From sequence record LR756500.1: a stretch of DNA of 13,940 bases. One strand, given 5' to 3'. Under the pieces are notes generated by a model that worked only from the letters and a program-made list of their open reading frames with translations, had not been told where the DNA came from and ran no database searches. The first letter of the stretch is position 1; the number at the start of each line of letters is the position of its first letter. Made by a program: the position numbers and the translations under genes. This document shows positions 1 to 8,403 of the stretch, piece by piece.

Positions 1-423
1 AAACTTTTCTAATGCATCTTTTTTACATAAATTTATTATATATGTTGTCATACATCTTTTATAATTAACCCAAGCTTTTCTATTATTATTTTTTGGTTTA
101 ATTGGTTTAGTTAATTGGGCTAATGGTTTAACTTCAATAATATATTGAACTATGATATCATCCTTTTTAATTTTTGCGTAAAAATCTGGATAATAATGAT
201 GTATTTTTTTATCTAATATATTATAATATGGTATCTTAAATGGTTCAGAAGACCATAACAAAACATCTGGATGTTTATCTAGATAAATACAAAACTTTTT
301 TTCCCAAGAAGATCTATAAATTACTGGTAAAGGACCTACATATTTAGCCTTTTCATTAATTTCATAATAACCTTGTTTATAAAAAGATTTTTTACTAGGT
401 TTTAAATTTTTAATATTCATCAT
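1..423 (-). CDS. gp4: Head completion nuclease, T4 gp4-like (TnsA-N/PD-(D/E)XK fold); runs off the window edge (3'-truncated)
   Basis: Not in the ORF track; translated by hand from ATG ATG at 423/420: (M)MNIKNLKPSKKSFYKQGYY...YVGPLPVIYRSSWEKKFCIYLDKHPDVLLWSSEPFKIPYYNILDKKIHHYYPDFYAKIKK...YIIEVKPLAQL...KKDALEKF. Open to base 1. YRSSWE, WSSE, IPY, H.Y.PDF and IEVKP are gp4-family motifs. Confidence 0.88.
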   Translation of the reverse strand, partial: MMNIKNLKPSKKSFYKQGYYEINEKAKYVGPLPVIYRSSWEKKFCIYLDKHPDVLLWSSEPFKIPYYNILDKKIHHYYPDFYAKIKKDDIIVQYIIEVKPLAQLTKPIKPKNNNRKAWVNYKRCMTTYIINLCKKDALEKF

Positions 424-429
424 ATATTT

Positions 430-437
430 TATATATA
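430..437 (-). promoter_or_regulatory. ATATATA motif upstream of gp4; candidate late promoter core
   Basis: Minus strand reads TTGTATATATAAAATATATG-ATG directly after the terminator. The same core precedes three other genes in the late block. Confidence 0.4.
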
Positions 438-438
438 C

Positions 439-473
439 AAACAATAAAATGGAGATAATTTTAACTATCTCCC
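439..473 (-). terminator. Rho-independent terminator after the gp55/endonuclease unit
   Basis: Minus strand: GGAGATA-GTTAAAAT-TATCTCC (arms at 451-457 and 466-472) followed by ATTTTATTGTTT. It lies about 18 nt downstream of the stop at 491. Confidence 0.75.
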
Positions 474-490
474 TTTATAATTAATCAATA

Positions 491-516
491 TTAAATACTA
501 TAGATTTCTGCATTAT
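491..516. repeat. 26-bp direct repeat, copy 1 (3' end of the endonuclease ORF)
   Basis: ttaaatactatagatttctgcattat matches 2153-2178 at 25 of 26 positions. Confidence 0.95.
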
Positions 517-2104
517 ATTCATATTTAAAATTTCCTGTTCCAAAACATCTATAATATCCTTTATCATGCATTACATCAACTCCAGTCATTAAAGGATCTG
601 CTCCTTCTCTAACCAATTTATCCTTTCTAAACTTGAACCTATTCTCCCTAATTCCATCTACTACCCACCAATAATTTAAACCAGTATGCCCTATATATTT
701 AAAACCTAATTTTGTATATAAATTATCTTGCTCATTTGGTGTCCAATCACAATCAGCATAACTAATAACTCGATTCGGTTCNNNNNNNNNNNNNNNNNNN
801 NNNNNNNNCTTACTAGCACCTCCGATAACTGAGGTATTTAATTTATTAGTAAATCTCATTAATTCATACTTATTATCTTCTGCTTTTTGTCCTAGATTTT
901 TTCTCAACTTACCAAAGGTCATTAATGATACTAACTCATCATTGTAATATAAACCTAATTTAACAGCAGCATTAACATTACCTTGTAAATGGTTCATATT
1001 TAAAAACTCTCGACTATCACTAGAGGACACCTTTTTAATTGTACATTTTCGTGCATAAATACTTTTTTTATTTTTATTTAAAAGATTTAAAATTCTTGAC
1101 TTAACTATATCTTGTTTATTTACACATGAATCTTCCCATATATGTACCAATTTAATGCCCTTAGTTTTAGCTAAAGATGTTTTATTTAAATGGTAATCTT
1201 TAGGTTTTTCTAATTCAGAGTGCCAATAAACTCCATTAAATTCAAATCCTATTTTATTATCAGGAATATAAATATCTATCTCTTTACCATTTAAAATTGT
1301 TCTATCGCGTAAAATATATTTTATATCTAAATTATCTAATATTTCAGTAAAATGTCTTTCTAATCCAATATTAGAATTTGGATTATATGGAGTACATAAA
1401 ATACAAGAATCTATATTATTTGATAATCTATAATTTAATTTTAAATATGAAATTTCATATTCTTTTTTACATTTTTCACAATATAATTTAACTAAACCTT
1501 TATTAAATTTTTTAGTTGTTCCTATACTATAATTTTTAACATCTAATAAATATTTATCTTTTAAATTATTTACTATTTTATTAGTTTTTTTATCTTTTAT
1601 ATTATTAATTATAGTTTTATTTTTCCATGGATTATCTTTACCATATTTATTTATACATGTATTTTTAAATTTATTTGATATTTCTTTAGATTGTAAACTG
1701 TGTTCAACTCCATATCTTTCAACTCTAGTAATTTTCATTTTTTCTTGTACATTACTAAGTTGTGCTACATTTTCAACTCCATATTTTTCAATATTTGTAG
1801 TTTTAGTTTTTTCAAGCTTTGATATCAATATACATTCTCTAGAACATTCCTTTAAATATCCTTTAGATATACTAATAAATCTAGAATTTGGAATTATATT
1901 ACTACAATATTTACAAGTAGGTTTACTTGATATATTATTAATCCAATGATAAGCTTTCTGCCTAAATGAATATGACTTAATATTATTAATTAAGTCATAT
2001 TCATTTATATGTTTTATTACTTCAGGATAATGTAAAGTTAAATATTCTACAGAAAGCCTTTTATATAAAAGTTTATTATTTAAAAAAAATAAATTTCTTA
2101 ACAT
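491..2104 (-). CDS. Putative free-standing homing-endonuclease-like protein: Cys motifs, 23-aa repeats, PD-(D/E)XK/Vsr-like nuclease and C-terminal GNAT (Mom-like) domain, 537 aa
   Basis: CKYC...CSREC and CEKC...CILC motifs; three KYG/RYG repeats; EIDIYIPDNKIGFEFNGVYWHS...HIWED nuclease motif; C-terminal YELMRF..VIGGASK...VISYAD...LYTKLGFKYIG. 27 N at 782-808 keep the frame. Confidence 0.72.
   Translation of the reverse strand: MLRNLFFLNNKLLYKRLSVEYLTLHYPEVIKHINEYDLINNIKSYSFRQKAYHWINNISSKPTCKYCSNIIPNSRFISISKGYLKECSRECILISKLEKTKTTNIEKYGVENVAQLSNVQEKMKITRVERYGVEHSLQSKEISNKFKNTCINKYGKDNPWKNKTIINNIKDKKTNKIVNNLKDKYLLDVKNYSIGTTKKFNKGLVKLYCEKCKKEYEISYLKLNYRLSNNIDSCILCTPYNPNSNIGLERHFTEILDNLDIKYILRDRTILNGKEIDIYIPDNKIGFEFNGVYWHSELEKPKDYHLNKTSLAKTKGIKLVHIWEDSCVNKQDIVKSRILNLLNKNKKSIYARKCTIKKVSSSDSREFLNMNHLQGNVNAAVKLGLYYNDELVSLMTFGKLRKNLGQKAEDNKYELMRFTNKLNTSVIGGASKXXXXXXXXXEPNRVISYADCDWTPNEQDNLYTKLGFKYIGHTGLNYWWVVDGIRENRFKFRKDKLVREGADPLMTGVDVMHDKGYYRCFGTGNFKYEYNAEIYSI
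1604..1810 (-). repeat. Three tandem 23-aa (69-nt) repeats inside the endonuclease
   Basis: aa 99-167: KTKTTNIEKYGVENVAQLSNVQE / KMKITRVERYGVEHSLQSKEISN / KFKNTCINKYGKDNPWKNKTIIN. The sequence ttcaactccatat recurs at 1703 and 1772, 69 nt apart. Confidence 0.85.
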
Positions 2105-2108
2105 TATT

Positions 2109-2138
2109 TATTGTATTTACATTATATGAAATACAATA
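2109..2138 (-). promoter_or_regulatory. Hairpin immediately upstream of the endonuclease start codon
   Basis: Perfect 10-bp inverted repeat TATTGTATTT/AAATACAATA (2129-2138 and 2109-2118) ending 4 nt before the ATG at 2104. Confidence 0.6.
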
Positions 2139-2152
2139 CAAATGTTTAAAAA

Positions 2153-2178
2153 TTAAATACTATAAATTTCTGCATTAT
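2153..2178. repeat. 26-bp direct repeat, copy 2 (3' end of gp55)
   Basis: ttaaatactataaatttctgcattat. The only difference from copy 1 is a synonymous Ile codon (ATT vs ATC). Confidence 0.95.
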
Positions 2179-2548: not shown

Positions 2549-4402
2549 TTATGCTATTTTTAAATTTTTCTTAACCAACATTTTAACAGGTTTACCTTGT
2601 GATTCAATTACTTTAACTTTGTCAGTATCACCTGATGTTGTATAATCGACTGCATATACGTATACTGTATCACCTACTTTAAATCCAAGCTCAGGTTTTA
2701 AAAGAGTTGCTTCAACATATCCTTGATCTTCTAAACTTTTTGCCTCAGATACATTACCTAGTTGTTGATAAACGTGTTGTAATTTAATTTCTTTATCTTT
2801 CAATTCTTCATCTAAAAGTTTAATAGCTTCAAATAAAGGTTCTCTATTTACAGCTAATTTTGTTGTTTTTTCTAATTCAGATTTTTTCTCTTGTAAGAAA
2901 TTAATTTTATCTATTAAATCACTTTTTTCAATTTCTAATTTAGTTCTAATTTTATTTTCTTCATTTAATTGTTCATGAATAGATTTAGAAATATCAAAAT
3001 TAACCATTTCCTTAACTAAAAGTTTTGCATCTTCTGCGCTTTCAGCCTTAATCAATTCATTTTTTTTCATTGAAGGATTAATCCTATTAACATATAATGT
3101 ATTATCTAATTTAATTAAATTAACCATAACACCTTCATTAATTTTAGAAGAAATGCTAGTTATAAAATCTAATTCTATAATTGTATCAAACTGTTCAACT
3201 AAATACATTAATTGATCAATTTTATACATTTCATCTAAATGAAAAAATCTTGATCTAATTAGATGATTTCTAAAACTTTCACCATTTTTATGATCTACGT
3301 TTTTTCCATTAATTTTAACAGTACCATCTGTTATAGAAATTTCTAATGAATTTTTGTCTTCGAATAAAATAAAACTATTATCTAAAATTTTAAAACTTTG
3401 AAAAGATTTATTAATATTATATAATGTTGGAGATATTTGTGTTGTTTCTTCTATACTATCATTTGATAATGTATAAAATTTATTGCCTAGAGCAAATGTA
3501 ATAGATTTATTTTTTTCATTTACTTCTACTGGTGAATATACTTTTGATACTTTTCCTTCTTCATTACTAATTGTAACTTTTTTATCATTAGAATATGCGT
3601 TAAGAATTACTTTAATTAAAGGTACCCATGAATGTTTTTCTAAAATATAATTTAATCCTTCTGTAATTTCTTTTTCATCTTTTTTAATTAAAAATTCTAA
3701 ATCATTAATTACACTTGAGTAGTATTTTGAATCTTTATTATTTAATGCATATAATGCATTAGAAAGTGCAGCTTTAAATTTATTGTTTTCGAAAATATCT
3801 CTCATTTCACCAATAAATTCTGAAACATTAATTAATTGATTATGAGTTGCTAATTCTTGTAACAACATACTTCCATAATAGAATTCAGGATTACTTTTAA
3901 TATCAGCAATATTTAATCTTTCTGTTAATTTAGCTTTAAGATTTAAATTTTCTGTTTTGTCTATATCTCTTAAACTACTTTGTAAGTCATTTAATTTAAT
4001 GATATATTTCTCAACAATTTTAACCGCAGTTTGAGCACTATAATTTACTCTAGTTTCATCTCCTGCTATTTTTTCTAAACTTTCCTTTAATGTTTTTAAT
4101 TTTAAAGAAAGAGTTGGAATGTTAAATGCATTATCCATTTTATTTAGTTTATTTTTATTATTTGCATCATAGTAATATAAAGGGTTTTCTGATTTTTTAC
4201 CCCAATAATTTTCAACGGCATATATAGATCTATCTCGAGGAACACCCATTCCTCTTAAGATAGAATATACTTGATTAGGTGATCTATGACCGTTATTAAA
4301 TTGATCAACCATCATTTTAAGATTATCTCTACCATCAACATTTTCATAAGGTATACCACCATTAGTATAAACTTGAGTCCATTCATTGATATCTTTTAAC
4401 AT
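2549..4402 (-). CDS. Hypothetical protein, 617 aa, with C-terminal coiled coil and small beta domain; possibly a virion protein
   Basis: Long ORF with an A-rich leader. Heptad-like K/E/L-rich stretch near aa 475-550 and a terminal GFKVGDTVYV...KVKVI segment. No catalytic motif recognised. Confidence 0.8.
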   Translation of the reverse strand: MLKDINEWTQVYTNGGIPYENVDGRDNLKMMVDQFNNGHRSPNQVYSILRGMGVPRDRSIYAVENYWGKKSENPLYYYDANNKNKLNKMDNAFNIPTLSLKLKTLKESLEKIAGDETRVNYSAQTAVKIVEKYIIKLNDLQSSLRDIDKTENLNLKAKLTERLNIADIKSNPEFYYGSMLLQELATHNQLINVSEFIGEMRDIFENNKFKAALSNALYALNNKDSKYYSSVINDLEFLIKKDEKEITEGLNYILEKHSWVPLIKVILNAYSNDKKVTISNEEGKVSKVYSPVEVNEKNKSITFALGNKFYTLSNDSIEETTQISPTLYNINKSFQSFKILDNSFILFEDKNSLEISITDGTVKINGKNVDHKNGESFRNHLIRSRFFHLDEMYKIDQLMYLVEQFDTIIELDFITSISSKINEGVMVNLIKLDNTLYVNRINPSMKKNELIKAESAEDAKLLVKEMVNFDISKSIHEQLNEENKIRTKLEIEKSDLIDKINFLQEKKSELEKTTKLAVNREPLFEAIKLLDEELKDKEIKLQHVYQQLGNVSEAKSLEDQGYVEATLLKPELGFKVGDTVYVYAVDYTTSGDTDKVKVIESQGKPVKMLVKKNLKIA

Positions 4403-4436: not shown

Positions 4437-5672
4437 TTATTTATTCATTTTATTGATATTACACCAATANNNNNNNNNNNNNNNNNNNNNCTTATCTGTA
4501 TCAAGTGGCATACTATAATCGCCCATGAATTGTTTGTAAATATTTATAGCACTATTTATGTCTCGATTTAAATCATTTCCACAATCACATATGTACTGTC
4601 TATCACTTAAATCCAAATCATAATTAATACCTCCACACTTACAACACGTTTTTGAAGTCCATGCTTCATTAACTTTTATAACTTCATTACCCTTTAACTT
4701 ATTCTTATACTCTAAAAGGTGTATAAAAGTTTGCAAATTCCAATTATTCTGCATTTGCCTATTCAAACCCTTAAAATCTGACTTTATATTTTTCTTTAAA
4801 TTCGTTAACTCGCCTATTAAAATCGTTTTATTTTGTTTAGATAAATCTTTACTTACCTTTTGTAAAATTAAATTAGTCTGTGTCTTCTTTTTAGAATAAA
4901 CTTTCTTTAATTTCCTATTTATTTTCTTAAATTTTTTACTTCCCTTCTTTTTAGTATCCCTTTTTGATTTTAATTCATCAATTCTTTTATCTAAAAACTT
5001 TTGATTTTTACTTAAATATTTTGAACTATAAACTAATCCTTTATTATTTTCAACATCATAAACAGCTAACAAATTCTTTTTACCTAAATCAATACTCAAA
5101 ACTTTATTTACATCTATATCCTTTAATTTATCTTCTTTCTTTTCATAAATTATAGAAGCATAATATTTATCATCTTTCTTATAAATCTTTAACTGCTTAA
5201 TTTCTGATTCTTTAGTTTTACTTCTCAAACAAATTAAATGTTTAATTTGCTCTGTATAATCAAGTTTTATTTCTAATTTTCTATAATTTGAATATGATAT
5301 TTTTAAAATATTTTCTTTAATAATAAAATCTTGAGTGTATGATAAAGTGAAAAAATAATCTTTACCTCTAAATTTAGGTGGGTTAGGATTTAAATCTTTG
5401 TTATTTTTAATTAATTTAAAGAAAATAGAATAGTTATTATGCAGAGTCCTTAATATTTCCTTTTTAATATCAAATGTTAAATAATCTGATTTATAATCTT
5501 TTAATTCTTTTTGTTGTTTATAATAAGAAATAAATGTTTTATTTTTTTCATAATGTTCTTTTAATTTACTCAAAAAATGATTATATAATAAACGTCCGTC
5601 ATTAGATATTGAATCAATGATAGAGTGTTGTTCATTATTTAATTTTAATTGTATTTTAAAAGTTAATAACAT
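4437..5672 (-). CDS. tnpB: TnpB-family RNA-guided endonuclease (IS200/IS605/IS607 OrfB, Cas12f-like), 411 aa
   Basis: N-terminal LTFKIQLKLNNEQ...R.LYN; RuvC-I SIDLGKKNL; RuvC-II ILIGELTNL; W....FIHLLEYK; Zn ribbon TSKTCCKCG...YICDCG; RuvC-III RDINSAINI. Confidence 0.93.
   Translation of the reverse strand: MLLTFKIQLKLNNEQHSIIDSISNDGRLLYNHFLSKLKEHYEKNKTFISYYKQQKELKDYKSDYLTFDIKKEILRTLHNNYSIFFKLIKNNKDLNPNPPKFRGKDYFFTLSYTQDFIIKENILKISYSNYRKLEIKLDYTEQIKHLICLRSKTKESEIKQLKIYKKDDKYYASIIYEKKEDKLKDIDVNKVLSIDLGKKNLLAVYDVENNKGLVYSSKYLSKNQKFLDKRIDELKSKRDTKKKGSKKFKKINRKLKKVYSKKKTQTNLILQKVSKDLSKQNKTILIGELTNLKKNIKSDFKGLNRQMQNNWNLQTFIHLLEYKNKLKGNEVIKVNEAWTSKTCCKCGGINYDLDLSDRQYICDCGNDLNRDINSAINIYKQFMGDYSMPLDTDKXXXXXXXYWCNINKMNK
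4451..4469 (-). ncRNA. Stem-loop at the tnpB 3' end; candidate part of an omegaRNA/right end
   Basis: Minus strand TATTGGT-GTAAT-ATCAATA pairs fully with one G-U wobble but has an A-C mismatch on the plus strand. TnpB omegaRNAs overlap the ORF 3' end. Full extent is unknown because 4470-4490 is N. Confidence 0.35.
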
Positions 5673-5687
5673 TAAAAATTTTTTTAT

Positions 5688-5695
5688 TATATATC
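5688..5695 (-). promoter_or_regulatory. GATATATA motif upstream of tnpB; candidate late promoter core
   Basis: Minus strand reads ATATGATATATAATAAAAAAATTTTTAATG, 15 nt from the ATG. Confidence 0.35.
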
Positions 5696-5717
5696 ATATA
5701 ATCATTCTTCATTAGTA

Positions 5718-6602
5718 TTAGGAATTAGGAATATCATCAGAAGGTGTAGCAGTTTCTCTAAAATTTCCATCACCATCAATAGCTGAATCATAATTTGTTA
5801 CTCTTACTCCATAATCAGGTCCTGTTGGCAATAATCCTTCAGTATTATCTATAATAACATGTCCCTGATTAGATAATTGATCTTCTTCTGGAACTATTGA
5901 CATATCACCCATATTATGTTGTAATCCTCCTGTCATATTATTTCCTGCGAAAATTTTCGTACTTTCTTCAAATATTGGTAAAAATGATTTTACAGAAAGA
6001 GAAAAACTTATATTATATGTAATTTTATCTGAATAACTAAAATCAAATAATTGTTCATTATCTAGTGATTCTGGAATTGAAACACTTGCAGCTATTCTAT
6101 AACCTCCTAAATCTACATAAAAACATCTATTTTTATAAAATGATCTCATTGCAGATTCAGTAATTTTTAACATTTCAATATTACTATTACAAATTATTTT
6201 AGTTTCAAATGTTAATTCAATTGGAATAATCATTGTTTCGTAAGAGTATGGAACTAAATTTTTGTCTTCTTTTTCTAATCGTTCCATTCTTACAAATTTA
6301 TTAACTAAAGATCCTGCATCTATATCCATAGATGTTAGATTTATAACACCTCTAGGAACAGTATTATATGTTCCTATAGCATGTTCATTTGTTGGATCTG
6401 CAGTTTCATCATTTAAAAAATTATCTATTAAAAATCTTTCATTTCCAGTAACAGAATAATAAAACGGAACGCCTAAATACTTTTTTTCTTGATCTGAAAT
6501 TTGTGAATATTTTATTTTATCATTTAATTCTGATAGTAATGATACTATAATATATCTTATAACTGAATCATCTTTATTAAATTCGAGATTGTATTTACTC
6601 AT
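5718..6602 (-). CDS. gp15: Tail sheath stabilizer/completion protein, T4 gp15-like, 294 aa
   Basis: VPFYY...ERFL...VPRGVINLTSMDID...IPIELTFETKI...EMLKITE..MRSFY follows the gp15-family pattern (VP..Y, PR, P..L.FEL.I, .QI.EQI.P.F). Confidence 0.7.
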   Translation of the reverse strand: MSKYNLEFNKDDSVIRYIIVSLLSELNDKIKYSQISDQEKKYLGVPFYYSVTGNERFLIDNFLNDETADPTNEHAIGTYNTVPRGVINLTSMDIDAGSLVNKFVRMERLEKEDKNLVPYSYETMIIPIELTFETKIICNSNIEMLKITESAMRSFYKNRCFYVDLGGYRIAASVSIPESLDNEQLFDFSYSDKITYNISFSLSVKSFLPIFEESTKIFAGNNMTGGLQHNMGDMSIVPEEDQLSNQGHVIIDNTEGLLPTGPDYGVRVTNYDSAIDGDGNFRETATPSDDIPNS

Positions 6603-6666
6603 TCTTTTAAATGTATTTGTTATTATATAAAAAAACTAAAAATAGTTTCATATTATTAGCTTTTTT

Positions 6667-6674
6667 TATATATC
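6667..6674 (-). promoter_or_regulatory. GATATATA motif after the terminator, upstream of gp15; candidate late promoter core
   Basis: Minus strand reads CCTTTTTTGATATATAAAAAAAGC; same terminator-then-motif layout as at 430-473. Confidence 0.4.
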
Positions 6675-6703
6675 AAAAAAGGCCCTACTAATGTAGAGCC
6701 TTT
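6675..6703 (-). terminator. Rho-independent terminator ending the replication/recombination block
   Basis: Minus strand: AAAGGCTCTAC-ATTA-GTAGGGCC-TTTTTT, an 8-bp GC-rich stem with one G-U pair plus a U tract, about 23 nt after the gp46 stop. Confidence 0.85.
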
Positions 6704-6726
6704 ATAACTTAAAACTTAAATATTAT

Positions 6727-8403
6727 TTATGTGACTGAAGCAACAATTATATTAGAAAAACCACCATTTTTTTCTATATTTATTTCTACATCAAACATAT
6801 GAGTAGGAAGTGAAGAGTGATTAATGATAAATGTATTTAAATCTATTTCTTTAATAACTTCTCTTAAAACATTTATAATAACATATCTACTATCTCCATC
6901 TAAGCTTGAAAATATTTCATCTAAAAATAAAATATTCAAAGTAGGATATCTAAGTTTTGTTAATTTTATTAAAGCAATAATAATTATAAAATCTGCTTTC
7001 TTTCTTTCTCCAGTACTTAATGATTTAGGATTAATTTTTTCTCCTAAGCTTGTAATGTTAGCATTAAATTTATCATCAAAAATAATGTTAAAAGGTAAAT
7101 GAACTTTTTTAAGTAATGATGAAATATTTCCATTTAAAGCGGGTAATATCATTTTCATTGCAAGATTTTTTATTCCACTATCTTCACCTAAAATTTCTTC
7201 TACTAATTTTAAAAAATAAAATTCATCACTTTTTTCTATTTTATCTTTATGCCTTTCTTGTTCTTTGACTCTTGATTCTTTTATTAAATTTTCTAAATGT
7301 TGAAATTCTTCTCCACTATTTTTCTTATTAACTATTTGGATTAAATCTTTTTTCATATTATCCATATTTGCTTCAATAGAAGAATTTTTAGAAATTATTT
7401 TATGCTGGGCATCTCTTATTTGAATAAATTTTTCTTTTTTATTAATAATTTCTTTTTCGCATTCTTTTATTTCTATTGGTAATATGTTTAATAATTCTTT
7501 ATATGAATTCTTTTTATCTTTATGAAATGATGTAGTTAGATCAGATTCACATTCTGGACATTTATCATTTTCATATAACTTTAATTTATGTTCTATTTTT
7601 TCTAAATCAGATTTCTTTTCATTATATTTCTTCTTTAATTTTTCTGTTATTTTTTCATACTCTTTTAGACTATCATCTACTTTTTTCTTAGCATCTAATA
7701 ATTTAATTTTATCATCTTTTAAAGTTAATAATTTATTTTTGAGTTCTTGTATTTTTTCTTCATTTTTAATATTAGAACTTTTTTGTAAATCATTTAATTT
7801 AGAATTAACTGAGGTAATAGATTGAGTAATTATACCTAATTCTTTTTCATAACTATTAATTTCTTCTTCTACTCCTTTTTTCTTTTCTTTAATTATTTGT
7901 CTCATTTCATTTATAACAGAAAAACCGAATAATCTATCAACAATAGATTTTTTGTCGCCTGGATTCATCGTTATAAATGATTTAAATTCATTAATTGAAA
8001 GAATAATTATATTTTTAAATACATTAAAAGGCATGCCGAAAAATTCGCGTTCCATATAATCTTGAACATTTAATTTTCCAGCTTGATCATATTCTTTATT
8101 ATCAATAAAAACTTTAAATATATTAGGAGATAATCCTCTTTCGATTTCTAAATATTTACCTTTAGAAAATATTTTAATTTTACCCCAAAGATTTTTATTA
8201 ATTCTATTTGGAAGATCTGTTAAATTAACCCCATCAACTTTACCATATAATAAAAATTTAATTACATTAGCGACGGTACTTTTGCCTGCACCATTCACTC
8301 CCGTCAATAGAATCAAGTGACTTTTATCTTCATTGAATTCAATCTTTTGAATTTTATTTCCATAACTAGCAAAATTTTTAAAATGTATACTTAATATTTT
8401 CAT
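6727..8403 (-). CDS. gp46: Recombination endonuclease ATPase subunit, T4 gp46 / SbcC-Rad50-like, 558 aa
   Basis: Walker A GVNGAGKST, coiled coils with a CPEC zinc hook, signature LSTGE, Walker B ILFLDEIFSSLD, H-loop INH. Confidence 0.95.
   Translation of the reverse strand: MKILSIHFKNFASYGNKIQKIEFNEDKSHLILLTGVNGAGKSTVANVIKFLLYGKVDGVNLTDLPNRINKNLWGKIKIFSKGKYLEIERGLSPNIFKVFIDNKEYDQAGKLNVQDYMEREFFGMPFNVFKNIIILSINEFKSFITMNPGDKKSIVDRLFGFSVINEMRQIIKEKKKGVEEEINSYEKELGIITQSITSVNSKLNDLQKSSNIKNEEKIQELKNKLLTLKDDKIKLLDAKKKVDDSLKEYEKITEKLKKKYNEKKSDLEKIEHKLKLYENDKCPECESDLTTSFHKDKKNSYKELLNILPIEIKECEKEIINKKEKFIQIRDAQHKIISKNSSIEANMDNMKKDLIQIVNKKNSGEEFQHLENLIKESRVKEQERHKDKIEKSDEFYFLKLVEEILGEDSGIKNLAMKMILPALNGNISSLLKKVHLPFNIIFDDKFNANITSLGEKINPKSLSTGERKKADFIIIIALIKLTKLRYPTLNILFLDEIFSSLDGDSRYVIINVLREVIKEIDLNTFIINHSSLPTHMFDVEINIEKNGGFSNIIVASVT

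What the first reader, a model, noticed from the sequence alone, without database searches (positions are those of the whole stretch)
491..2178. Endonuclease cassette that shares its C-terminus with the late sigma factor through a 26-bp direct repeat
Seen: 491-516 and 2153-2178 match at 25 of 26 nt, so gp55 ends DNAEIYSI* and the endonuclease ends YNAEIYSI*. The repeat is in frame in both genes and the single mismatch is synonymous. The endonuclease ORF has no stop of its own and uses the one in the repeat. Inference: a crossover between the repeats would delete 1,662 bp, leave gp55 intact next to the terminator at 439-473, and release a circle whose nuclease ORF is also intact. The site therefore behaves like an att core that is neutral for both genes. 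Classical free-standing T4 homing endonuclease genes spread by gene conversion without such duplications, and no integrase is visible. This could be an undescribed way for nuclease cassettes to enter essential genes without damage.
Basis: partly seen in the sequence, partly recalled or inferred. Interest (0 to 1): 0.85.

Follow-up and report, generated by a model that had tools for sequence, protein, structure and literature searches.

The report
Homing nuclease sharing gp55's tail
A selfish nuclease gene sits inside the last codons of a huge phage's essential late-transcription factor gene, and a 26-base duplication keeps both genes whole; relatives show the same trick with another nuclease family, a pattern I could find described only in fungal mitochondria.

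Summary
Window 491-516 and 2153-2178 match at 25 of 26 bases. It is the only such repeat in the window, and none arose in 200 simulations. Both copies lie in frame at the ends of two adjacent minus-strand genes: a gp55-like late sigma factor and a 537-aa Hef-like (EDxHD, Vsr-fold) homing endonuclease. The N run is an exact 27-base mask and is in frame.

The tail ..EIYSI is native to gp55. Orthologues end in ..GIY[ST][IVL], whereas the nuclease's four paralogues in this genome stop 2-6 codons after the conserved FEW/Y motif.

About 130 of 145 related gp55-gp4 loci are empty. Five other contigs carry a GIY-YIG endonuclease at the same place. Its reading frame also lacks its own stop and ends in a 45 to at least 64-base copy of that phage's own gp55 tail.

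The best explanation is insertion by break repair, with at least one junction at a microhomology (ATAA here). This is the phage counterpart of the C-terminal duplications left by mobile endonuclease ORFs in fungal mitochondria. An att-like, recombinase-driven cassette is not supported: there is no recombinase, the repeat length and borders vary, and no excision joint was seen. A crossover between the copies would nonetheless remove the insert cleanly. Modest evidence (5 synonymous, 0 nonsynonymous changes) suggests the borrowed tail is selected.

The parts
1..420 (-). gp4-like head completion (head closure) gene. Its 5' part lies in the window; the start ATG is at 420-418 by homology with relatives (MNIKN..).
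   Evidence: PHROG 218 'head closure', E 5.7e-31. Pfam TnsA-like N domain. It is the gene that directly follows gp55 in about 130 related loci.
441..472 (-). Intrinsic terminator: hairpin 472-451 followed by a T run. A late-promoter-like TATA-rich box and the gp4 start lie further downstream.
   Evidence: Terminator scan. The closest empty allele, L030, has the same layout: stop, hairpin, AT-rich box, gp4.
491..516 (-). Repeat copy R2: the last 7 codons and TAA stop of the endonuclease ORF. It is the displaced native gp55 tail, still in its native downstream context.
491..2104 (-). Hef-like (EDxHD, Vsr-fold) free-standing homing endonuclease gene, 537 aa. It has no stop codon of its own.
   Evidence: phrog_3339 'homing endonuclease', E 4.5e-110, profile positions 43-534 of 536. 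DUF7487. PDB 3R3P, I-Bth0305I. Four full-length paralogues elsewhere in the genome.
782..808 (.). Masked stretch of 27 N, equal to 9 codons, in frame within the C-terminal domain of the endonuclease. Not read and not filled.
1091..1366 (-). Vsr-like nuclease domain (residues 247-338). The E, D, N, H and D catalytic positions of the EDxHD family are present: LERH, EIDIY, EFNG, YWHS, WEDS.
   Evidence: Alignment to 3R3P, E 4.6e-7. Residue roles from PMC3239194.
2105..2152 (-). 48-nt spacer between the gp55 stop and the endonuclease start. It holds a weak hairpin that is not significant.
   Evidence: Fold z-score -1.07. By eye I saw no similarity to the regions upstream of the paralogues.
2153..2178 (-). 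Repeat copy R1: the last 7 codons and TAA stop of gp55. By analogy with T4 gp55 this is the acidic and hydrophobic C-terminal epitope.
   Evidence: gp55 tails of relatives. The C-terminal clamp-binding epitope of T4 gp55 (PMC2988020).
2153..2527 (-). gp55-like late-transcription sigma factor gene, 124 aa.
   Evidence: phrog_234 'late sigma transcription factor', E 7.3e-13. Weak Sigma70_r2 match below the cut-off. More than 170 orthologous loci.
2549..4402 (-). Conserved 617-aa gene upstream of gp55 with no family assignment. It is part of the syntenic block gp15 - ~600 aa - gp55 - gp4 - gp2 - portal.
   Evidence: Synteny in L253 and L254.

Best explanation
A free-standing Hef-like (EDxHD) homing endonuclease gene has been inserted into the 3' end of the essential gp55 gene of a roughly 430-460 kb uncultured phage. 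The insertion happened by double-strand-break repair, not by site-specific recombination.

The insert carries a fresh copy of gp55's last 7 codons and stop (R1), a 48-nt spacer, and the nuclease ORF. The nuclease ORF was joined two codons before its own natural stop, at a 4-nt microhomology (ATAA), to the displaced native gp55 tail (R2). R2 still sits in front of the native terminator and gp4.

The result is that gp55 is complete, the nuclease borrows gp55's last 7 residues and stop, and downstream signals are untouched. The same solution recurs at this site. A GIY-YIG endonuclease lineage in five other phage contigs also lacks its own stop and ends in a copy of its own phage's gp55 tail. There its stop overlaps or abuts the gp4 start, as the gp55 stop does in empty alleles.

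Shown: the repeat, the reading frames, the native origin of the tail, the empty alleles, the recurrence, the microhomology at the junction, and the intact catalytic residues.

Inferred: the repair pathway. The proposal is one-sided homing, with homology in gp55 and an illegitimate joint on the other side. Spread thereafter would be by ordinary homing, and occasional clean loss would occur by recombination between R1 and R2.
For: The tail is native to gp55. Orthologues end in ..[DE]xxG[IV]Y[ST][IVL]*. The nuclease's paralogues and 56 relatives elsewhere do not.

Empty alleles exist. Of 145 gp55 loci with gp4 downstream, about 130 have a gap of -197 to +52 nt, most often -1. The closest empty allele, L030 (76% nt identity), has gp55, stop, hairpin, gp4, like the R2 flank here.

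Junction: ours reads ..GAA TAT AAT GCA.., paralogue p63k reads ..GAA TAT AAA AAA TAA, and gp55 reads ..GGT GAT AAT GCA... The overlap is ATAA.

Recurrence with another nuclease family: L027 has a 60-nt repeat, 54/60, with all 6 differences synonymous. L078 has at least 64 nt at 100% identity. L253, L254 and L255 have about 45 nt.

Specificity: among 16,879 + 3,641 same-strand ORF pairs, the only shared C-terminal tails of at least 5 identical residues were these cases and one pair of tandem paralogues.

The nuclease looks active: it is full length against the family profile and its catalytic residues are conserved.

Precedents: one-sided, microhomology-mediated homing in T4 (review PMC2988022 citing Parker et al. 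1999). C-terminal duplications flanking mobile endonuclease ORFs in fungal mitochondria, with mostly synonymous differences between copies (PMC3630166; PMC4019555).
Against: No donor or near-identical empty allele was found; the closest relatives are no more than 78% identical in nt. The pathway and the direction of the event are therefore inferred.

A 4-nt AT-only microhomology is weak evidence in a genome with 24% GC.

The nuclease's nearest kin are paralogues at other loci of the same genome (58% identity). They are not the Hef-like genes that follow gp55 in L015, L089 and L100 (34-38%). A gp55-linked donor is therefore not demonstrated, and both junctions may be illegitimate.

Cleavage of the empty allele is untested.

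Both independent junctions are in frame. The chance of that is 1/9, which may point to selection the model does not require.
Confidence: 0.72

Rival explanations
1. One reading: the 26-bp repeat is an att-like core. The cassette enters and leaves by conservative site-specific recombination through a 1,662-bp circle.
For: The direct repeats flank the insert exactly, and recombination between them would restore an intact empty allele. A TnpB-like 'transposase' gene lies about 2.3 kb away at 4437-5672.
Against: There is no recombinase in the insert; its only ORF is the endonuclease. Repeat length and borders differ between cases, at 26, about 45, 60 and at least 64 nt, so there is no common core. 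The copies differ by up to 10%, and the NN/GG difference between them is shared by L254 and L255. Paralogues and 56 relatives have no flanking repeat. No deletion or circle joint was seen in contigs of four runs, though that is a weak test. TnpB-type proteins are RNA-guided nucleases of IS200/IS605 elements, not integrases (my own knowledge).
Confidence: 0.04
2. Functional capture: the shared tail is more than a scar. The endonuclease keeps gp55's C-terminal peptide because the peptide works on the nuclease. [quoted passage not shown] In addition, or instead, terminating at the native stop may preserve translational coupling to gp4.
For: Two independent junctions (Hef-like and GIY-YIG) are both in frame and both lack their own stop. 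Orthologous nuclease tails in L254 and L255 differ at 5 codons, all synonymous, against 23 synonymous and 30 nonsynonymous in the nuclease body (p about 0.02). The arrangement has persisted through about 20% nt divergence. In L253-L255 the nuclease stop overlaps the gp4 ATG (TAATG), as gp55's stop does in most empty loci. The C-terminal epitopes of T4 gp55, gp33 and gp43 are portable and interchangeable (PMC2988020).
Against: The numbers are small. Synonymous-only differences between R1 and R2 are also expected if both copies simply derive from gp55 alleles. No T4-like clamp gene was found in this genome. No other ORF of the genome, polymerase included, ends in a similar motif. In this window a terminator and 66 nt separate the shared stop from gp4, so coupling cannot be the reason here. 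Here the tail is only 7 residues.
Confidence: 0.2
3. Artefact or chance: the repeat is a mis-assembly, or a coincidence in AT-rich DNA.
For: The genome has 24% GC and many imperfect AT-rich repeats. The 3' half of the nuclease is fragmented in Logan contigs because of paralogues.
Against: None of 200 simulations gave such a repeat. The repeat is shorter than a read. The R1 junction is covered by an independent contig with 0 differences. Both copies end exactly on stop codons, in frame. The architecture is found in five other assemblies from other samples.
Confidence: 0.02

Closest known systems
Mobile endonuclease ORFs (mORFs) with carboxy-terminal duplication of the host gene in fungal mitochondria. 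Examples: Allomyces macrogynus atp6; Glomus atp6, atp9, cox2 and nad3; Phlebia cox2 and atp6.
   Same: The layout is gene core, inserted C-terminus, endonuclease ORF (GIY-YIG or another family), then the displaced native C-terminus. The host gene stays functional. The copies differ mainly at synonymous sites. [quoted passage not shown]
   Different: This case is in a phage, not an organelle. The nuclease has its own start after the host gene's stop, and it is the nuclease that reads into the displaced native tail and uses its stop. The duplicated piece is very short (26-64 nt). The nuclease family here is EDxHD/Hef rather than LAGLIDADG. The native remnant is translated rather than silent.
Free-standing homing endonucleases of T4-like phages (Seg, Mob, Hef) and 'intronless homing'.
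   Same: A stand-alone nuclease gene lies between conserved genes, is variably present among relatives, has several paralogues per genome, and sits next to an essential gene. Nucleases of different families target the same gene (PMC2988022).
   Different: The T4 examples lie in intergenic regions, and the review describes no duplication of the neighbouring gene's end (0 occurrences of 'duplication' or 'duplicated'). Here the insertion point is inside the coding sequence and is repaired by a duplication.
One-sided (illegitimate) homing in T4: Parker, Belisle and Belfort 1999, as summarised in PMC2988022.
   Same: Homology on one side only, and a junction at a microhomology on the other. It was proposed as the route by which mobile elements reach new sites.
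   Different: That was shown experimentally for the td intron with engineered substrates. Here it is inferred from one natural junction (ATAA).
I-Bth0305I and the EDxHD family, with Hef of phage U5.
   Same: The nuclease domain is homologous (3R3P, E 4.6e-7) with the catalytic residues conserved. The paper places Hef-type phage endonucleases in this family.
   Different: I-Bth0305I is intron-encoded in recA and has NUMOD DNA-binding modules. This protein is free-standing, with DUF7487 repeats and a roughly 200-aa C-terminal domain. Its target is unknown.
Integrative elements that duplicate the 3' end of their target gene at attL and attR, such as phages and islands in tRNA genes (my own knowledge).
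   Same: A direct repeat reconstitutes the 3' end of the target gene, so the insertion is neutral.
   Different: Those elements need a site-specific recombinase and have a fixed core. Neither is found here.

Membership tests
EDxHD / Hef-like homing endonucleases | Vsr-like nuclease domain carrying the composite E, D, (N), H, D catalytic residues | tested here: met
   3R3P alignment, E 4.6e-7. E (LERH), D (EIDIY), N (EFNG), H (YWHS) and D (WEDS) are present (residue roles).
EDxHD / Hef-like homing endonucleases | Full-length similarity to annotated phage Hef-like proteins | tested here: met
   phrog_3339, E 4.5e-110, over profile positions 43-534 of 536. DNA hits to annotated 'Hef-like homing endonuclease' genes of Tenacibaculum, Campylobacter and Bacillus phages.
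Homing endonuclease gene (functional sense) | Presence/absence polymorphism at a fixed site among related genomes | tested here: met
   About 130 of 145 related gp55-gp4 loci are empty.
Homing endonuclease gene (functional sense) | The enzyme cleaves the allele that lacks the gene and is copied into it | not testable with these tools
   This needs protein and an empty-allele substrate.
T4-type late sigma factor gp55 | Sequence membership | tested here: met
   phrog_234, E 7.3e-13. The Pfam Sigma70_r2 match is only 16.3 bits, below the cut-off. Orthologues are annotated as late sigma in Xanthomonas jumbo phages.
T4-type late sigma factor gp55 | C-terminal acidic and hydrophobic epitope that binds the sliding clamp | tested here: inconclusive
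   A conserved C-terminal ..[DE]xxG[IV]Y[ST][IVL] follows a linker of variable length, as described for T4. The motif differs from T4's SLDFLY, and no clamp gene was found.
mORF-type C-terminal duplication (fungal mitochondria) | An endonuclease ORF flanked by two copies of the host gene's 3' end, with the upstream copy completing the gene | tested here: met
   and for the other loci.
mORF-type C-terminal duplication (fungal mitochondria) | The downstream copy is the native one and the upstream copy is foreign (more diverged from close relatives) | tested here: inconclusive
   R2 lies in the native downstream context. The copies differ at only one synonymous site here, and no relative close enough to polarise the change was found.
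Site-specific recombination cassette (att core plus recombinase) | Recombinase gene in or beside the element | tested here: not met
   The only ORF in the 1,662-bp insert is the endonuclease.
Site-specific recombination cassette (att core plus recombinase) | The same core sequence at independent insertions | tested here: not met
   Repeat lengths are 26, about 45, 60 and at least 64 nt, with different borders. Paralogues have no repeats.
Site-specific recombination cassette (att core plus recombinase) | Excised circle or empty joint in the same population | tested here: inconclusive
   No such joint appeared in Logan contigs of 4 runs, but contigs drop rare variants and no raw reads were available.

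The most novel reading that the evidence does not exclude
Tail-sharing is a selected strategy rather than a repair scar. Homing endonucleases of at least two families settle inside the 3' end of gp55 and fuse to gp55's C-terminal peptide. By analogy with T4, that peptide is a portable sliding-clamp-binding epitope. The nuclease would then be delivered to clamp-loaded, replicating DNA. By stopping at the native stop, it would also keep expression of the downstream gene intact.
Probability: 0.2. Interest if true: 0.8.

Novelty: new variant of a known kind. Interest (0 to 1): 0.6.

Why it matters
Free-standing homing endonucleases of phages are thought to be confined to intergenic DNA, because an insertion into an essential gene is lethal unless an intron or intein splices it out. 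This locus and its relatives show a third solution in phages. A short duplication of the gene's end lets the nuclease live inside the coding sequence of an essential transcription factor.

The solution has arisen with two unrelated nuclease families at the same gene. It has persisted through about 20% nucleotide divergence. It parallels the mitochondrial mORF gene hybrids, which points to a general outcome of break repair with homology on one side.

For practical annotation, shared C-terminal codons between neighbouring genes mark such insertions and give the approximate break point. The short direct repeat also predicts clean loss of the nuclease gene, which matters for the gain-and-loss cycle of these elements. 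If the borrowed tail is functional, this would be a nuclease that has captured a clamp-binding peptide.

Tried and rejected
1. Excision or circle joints. Logan contigs of four runs from three studies showed no 516-to-2179 joint and no outward joint. Only contigs were available, so this is weak. A 227-nt unitig from another study stops exactly at 516, but at depth 2.4; I note it and do not interpret it.

2. Generality within the nuclease family. The four paralogues in the genome, the three Hef-like genes that follow gp55 in L015, L089 and L100, and 56 IMG/VR relatives show no shared tail. The feature belongs to the gp55-gp4 site, not to the family.

3. Other inserts between gp55 and gp4. These are a pentapeptide-repeat gene and several small ORFs in L019, L061, L082/083, L097, L101/102 and L108. 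None has a tail copy; the best match is 17/24 or lower.

4. A third pair with a shared tail (G000 276174-277805) turned out to be tandem LRR paralogues with 59% identity over their full length, which is ordinary.

5. Polarising which copy is native. No relative is closer than about 78-82% nt identity.

6. The hairpin in the 48-nt spacer, as a possible regulator, is not significant (z -1.07).

7. Clamp partner. Pfam PF09116 and PF02916 and T4 gp45 found nothing in the genome, and the PF02916 control was silent too. No other ORF ends in a similar motif. I therefore did not run complex prediction.

8. Literature. Four searches found no phage paper that describes a duplication of a host gene's end beside a homing endonuclease. 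Subscription journals are not covered.

9. Close homologues of the L078 nuclease matched only its N-terminal domain.
Full report
WHAT THE WINDOW IS

The window equals G000:C1:33558-47497 of a 429-kb viral contig. It is 100% identical, outside the masks, to LR756500.1, an uncultured 462-kb phage. GC content is 24%. All genes discussed lie on the minus strand. In the direction of transcription the order is:
- a gp15-like tail sheath stabiliser (5718-6602);
- a TnpB-like 'transposase' (4437-5672);
- a conserved 617-aa gene (2549-4402);
- gp55-like late sigma (2153-2527);
- a 48-nt spacer;
- a 537-aa endonuclease gene (491-2104);
- a terminator (472-441);
- gp4-like head completion (420-1).

THE GAP

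The window and the genome slice have the same length and differ only at the two N runs. The genome copy of the nuclease gene is one open frame without stops over the same coordinates. The nine X align gaplessly with nine residues in seven homologues. The family profile match is continuous. The N run is therefore an exact 27-nt mask, in frame. I masked it in my working copy and did not read or fill it. I also did not fetch the database entry of this protein (P0243), and I left loci L001 and L029, which are the same contig, out of the scripts that read the nuclease-gp55 region.

THE OBSERVATION

It is confirmed in every detail.
- The repeat is 25/26, extending to 28/30, with a spacing of 1,662.
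- It is the only repeat of that quality in the window, and none appeared in 200 simulations.
- Both copies end on TAA, in frame. The single mismatch is ATT/ATC, both Ile.
- The nuclease lacks its own stop. Its four full-length paralogues in the same genome stop 2-6 codons after the conserved ..GN[YF]K[FY]E[WY].
- An independent Logan contig covers 1003-2700 without a difference.

WHOSE TAIL IS IT

It is gp55's. Orthologues in six huge-phage records and in more than 170 metagenomic loci end in a variable linker followed by ..[DE]xxG[IV]Y[ST][IVL]*. No relative of the nuclease carries it.

[quoted passage not shown] It is preceded by a divergent flexible linker and is interchangeable with the C-termini of gp33 and gp43 (PMC2988020). 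T4 gp55 ends ..SLDFLYEAND and gp43 ends ..SLDFLFG. By position and character the repeat encodes the counterpart of that epitope, but the motif is different. I found no clamp gene in this genome, so this remains an analogy.

WHAT THE NUCLEASE IS

It is a Hef-like free-standing homing endonuclease of the EDxHD (Vsr-fold) family.
- phrog_3339, E 4.5e-110.
- PDB 3R3P (I-Bth0305I), E 4.6e-7, with the E, D, N, H and D catalytic positions present. PMC3239194 places Hef-type phage enzymes in this family.
- It is full length and probably active.
- Its nearest kin are paralogues elsewhere in the same genome (58% identity). The Hef-like genes that follow gp55 in L015, L089 and L100 are only 34-38% identical and have their own stops. 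The 3' flank of gp55 has therefore been invaded by this family more than once.

EMPTY ALLELES

Of 145 loci with gp55 and a downstream gp4, about 130 have the two genes adjacent. The most common arrangement is a gap of -1 nt in my coordinates. The closest relative of the window, L030 (76% nt identity), has gp55 ..NEIYSLI*, a roughly 50-nt spacer with a hairpin, and then gp4. That is the same layout as downstream of R2 here. R2 with its flank is thus the native 3' context of gp55, and the body of gp55 with R1 is a complete native gene.

RECURRENCE

This is the main new result. At the same place, between gp55 and gp4, five other contigs carry a GIY-YIG/NUMOD3 endonuclease. Its ORF has no stop of its own and ends in a copy of that phage's own gp55 tail.
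- L027: 60-nt repeat, 54/60, with all six differences synonymous.
- L078: at least 64 nt, 100% identical, truncated by the contig end.
- L253, L254 and L255: about 45 nt.

These nucleases share a C-terminal DNA-binding half but are unrelated to the Hef-like enzyme. The junction lies before GTISL in L027 and L078, and seven codons later in L253-255. In L253-255 the nuclease's stop overlaps the gp4 ATG (TAATG). In L027 it lies 2 nt before the ATG. This reproduces the native gp55/gp4 junction.

A blind scan of 20,520 same-strand ORF pairs, in the genome and all fetched loci, looked for shared C-terminal tails of at least 5 identical residues. It found only these cases and one ordinary pair of tandem paralogues.

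MECHANISM

The junction of the nuclease with R2 lies two codons before the family's natural stop. It falls in a 4-nt overlap (ATAA) between a paralogue-like 3' end and the gp55 tail. The left border is at the gp55 stop, plus 0 to 4 nt.

The simplest reading is break repair in which at least one joint was illegitimate. A break occurs in or near the gp55 tail. Copying then starts from a template that carries gp55, stop, spacer and nuclease. The new strand is joined to the other broken end at a microhomology, and this duplicates the stretch between the two joints.

'One-sided' homing with microhomology junctions has been shown in T4 (PMC2988022 citing Parker et al. 1999). The same architecture is known from mobile endonuclease ORFs in fungal mitochondria, down to the mostly synonymous differences between copies (PMC3630166; PMC4019555).

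Once formed, the cassette has ordinary homology on both sides and can spread by homing. Recombination between R1 and R2 would delete it precisely.

One consequence follows from the sequence itself. Every window of the empty allele shorter than the repeat is still present in the occupied allele. Self-protection therefore cannot rest on disruption of a short target at the insertion point. This is as in T4 Seg and Mob enzymes, which cut at a distance and rely on polymorphisms.

THE ATT MODEL

It is not supported.
- There is no recombinase in the insert.
- There is no common core.
- The copies are up to 10% diverged, and the NN/GG difference between them is shared by two diverged phages.
- Paralogues have no repeats.
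- No excision joint was seen in contigs (a weak test).

IS THE TAIL ON THE NUCLEASE JUST A SCAR?

Some observations suggest it is not.
- Both independent junctions are in frame.
- L254 and L255 (gp55 82% nt identity, nuclease 80%) show 5 synonymous and 0 nonsynonymous codon changes in the nuclease tail. The nuclease body shows 23 synonymous and 30 nonsynonymous (p about 0.02).
- The arrangement has lasted through that divergence.

Against this, the numbers are small. Coupling cannot apply in this window, where a terminator follows the stop. The clamp-binding idea is untested. I rate a functional tail at about 0.2.

Two things remain unexplained. The gp55 tails of L254 and L255 are 42/42 nt identical, although 54 of the other 114 codons differ. 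Also, the tail copies cluster by genome rather than by copy type between L253 and L254/255. That pattern implies either gene conversion between the copies or re-creation of the duplication on transfer.

VERDICT

It is the work of homing endonucleases and break repair, not of an att system. It is a phage version of a phenomenon known from fungal mitochondria. It recurs at gp55 with two nuclease families, and in my searches I found no phage report of it. I class it as a new variant of a known kind and score its interest at 0.6.

Noticed in passing
window 4437-5672 (-): A 411-aa TnpB-like 'transposase' gene (phrog_506, E 7.5e-60) lies between the gp15-like gene (5718-6602) and the 617-aa gene. 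In relatives L253 and L254, gp15 is followed directly by the ~600-aa gene, so this is a second mobile-element insertion in the same conserved block. It contains the second masked stretch, 4470-4490.
   Followed up: partly
L015 4429-6381; L089 4141-5880; L100 3368-5143: In three other huge-phage contigs, where gp4 does not follow gp55, a Hef-like endonuclease gene sits immediately after gp55. It has its own stop and there is no duplication; in L089 the start overlaps the gp55 stop (ATGA). These genes are only 34-38% identical to the window's nuclease. The 3' flank of gp55 looks like a hot spot for this family.
   Followed up: partly
L254 2925-2966 versus L255 378-419: The last 14 codons of gp55 are identical at all 42 nt between two phages whose remaining 114 gp55 codons differ at 54 positions. 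This suggests a nucleotide-level constraint or a recent conversion of the copy next to the nuclease.
   Followed up: no
G000:C1:276174-277805 (outside the window): Two tandem leucine-rich-repeat genes (278 and 259 aa, 59% identical) share their last 13 residues, ..DIANADDFGFFDN. This looks like an ordinary tandem duplication, but the acidic and aromatic C-terminus is notably conserved at the DNA level.
   Followed up: partly
G000:C1 25622-27421, 52214-53917, 63042-64985, 207507-208943 (outside the window): There are four further full-length Hef-like endonuclease genes in the same genome, 47-58% identical to the window's. Some overlap their neighbours' starts or stops. Two shorter relatives lie at 120556-121761 and 159814-160827.
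   Followed up: partly
L025, L026, L050, L052 5368-5883: In one group of relatives a 171-aa pentapeptide-repeat protein gene occupies the gp55-gp4 gap, with no duplicated tail.
   Followed up: no
window 290-516: In a groundwater run from a different study, a 227-nt unitig matches 290-516 with one difference and ends exactly at the inner border of the repeat. The depth is 2.4, too low to say whether a different sequence follows there.
   Followed up: no
L253 4888-6833: Another GIY-YIG/NUMOD3 gene (5282-5950) lies between two ORFs that both hit the PolyA_pol family (4888-5328 and 5934-6833). This looks like a nucleotidyltransferase gene split by a nuclease insertion.
   Followed up: no
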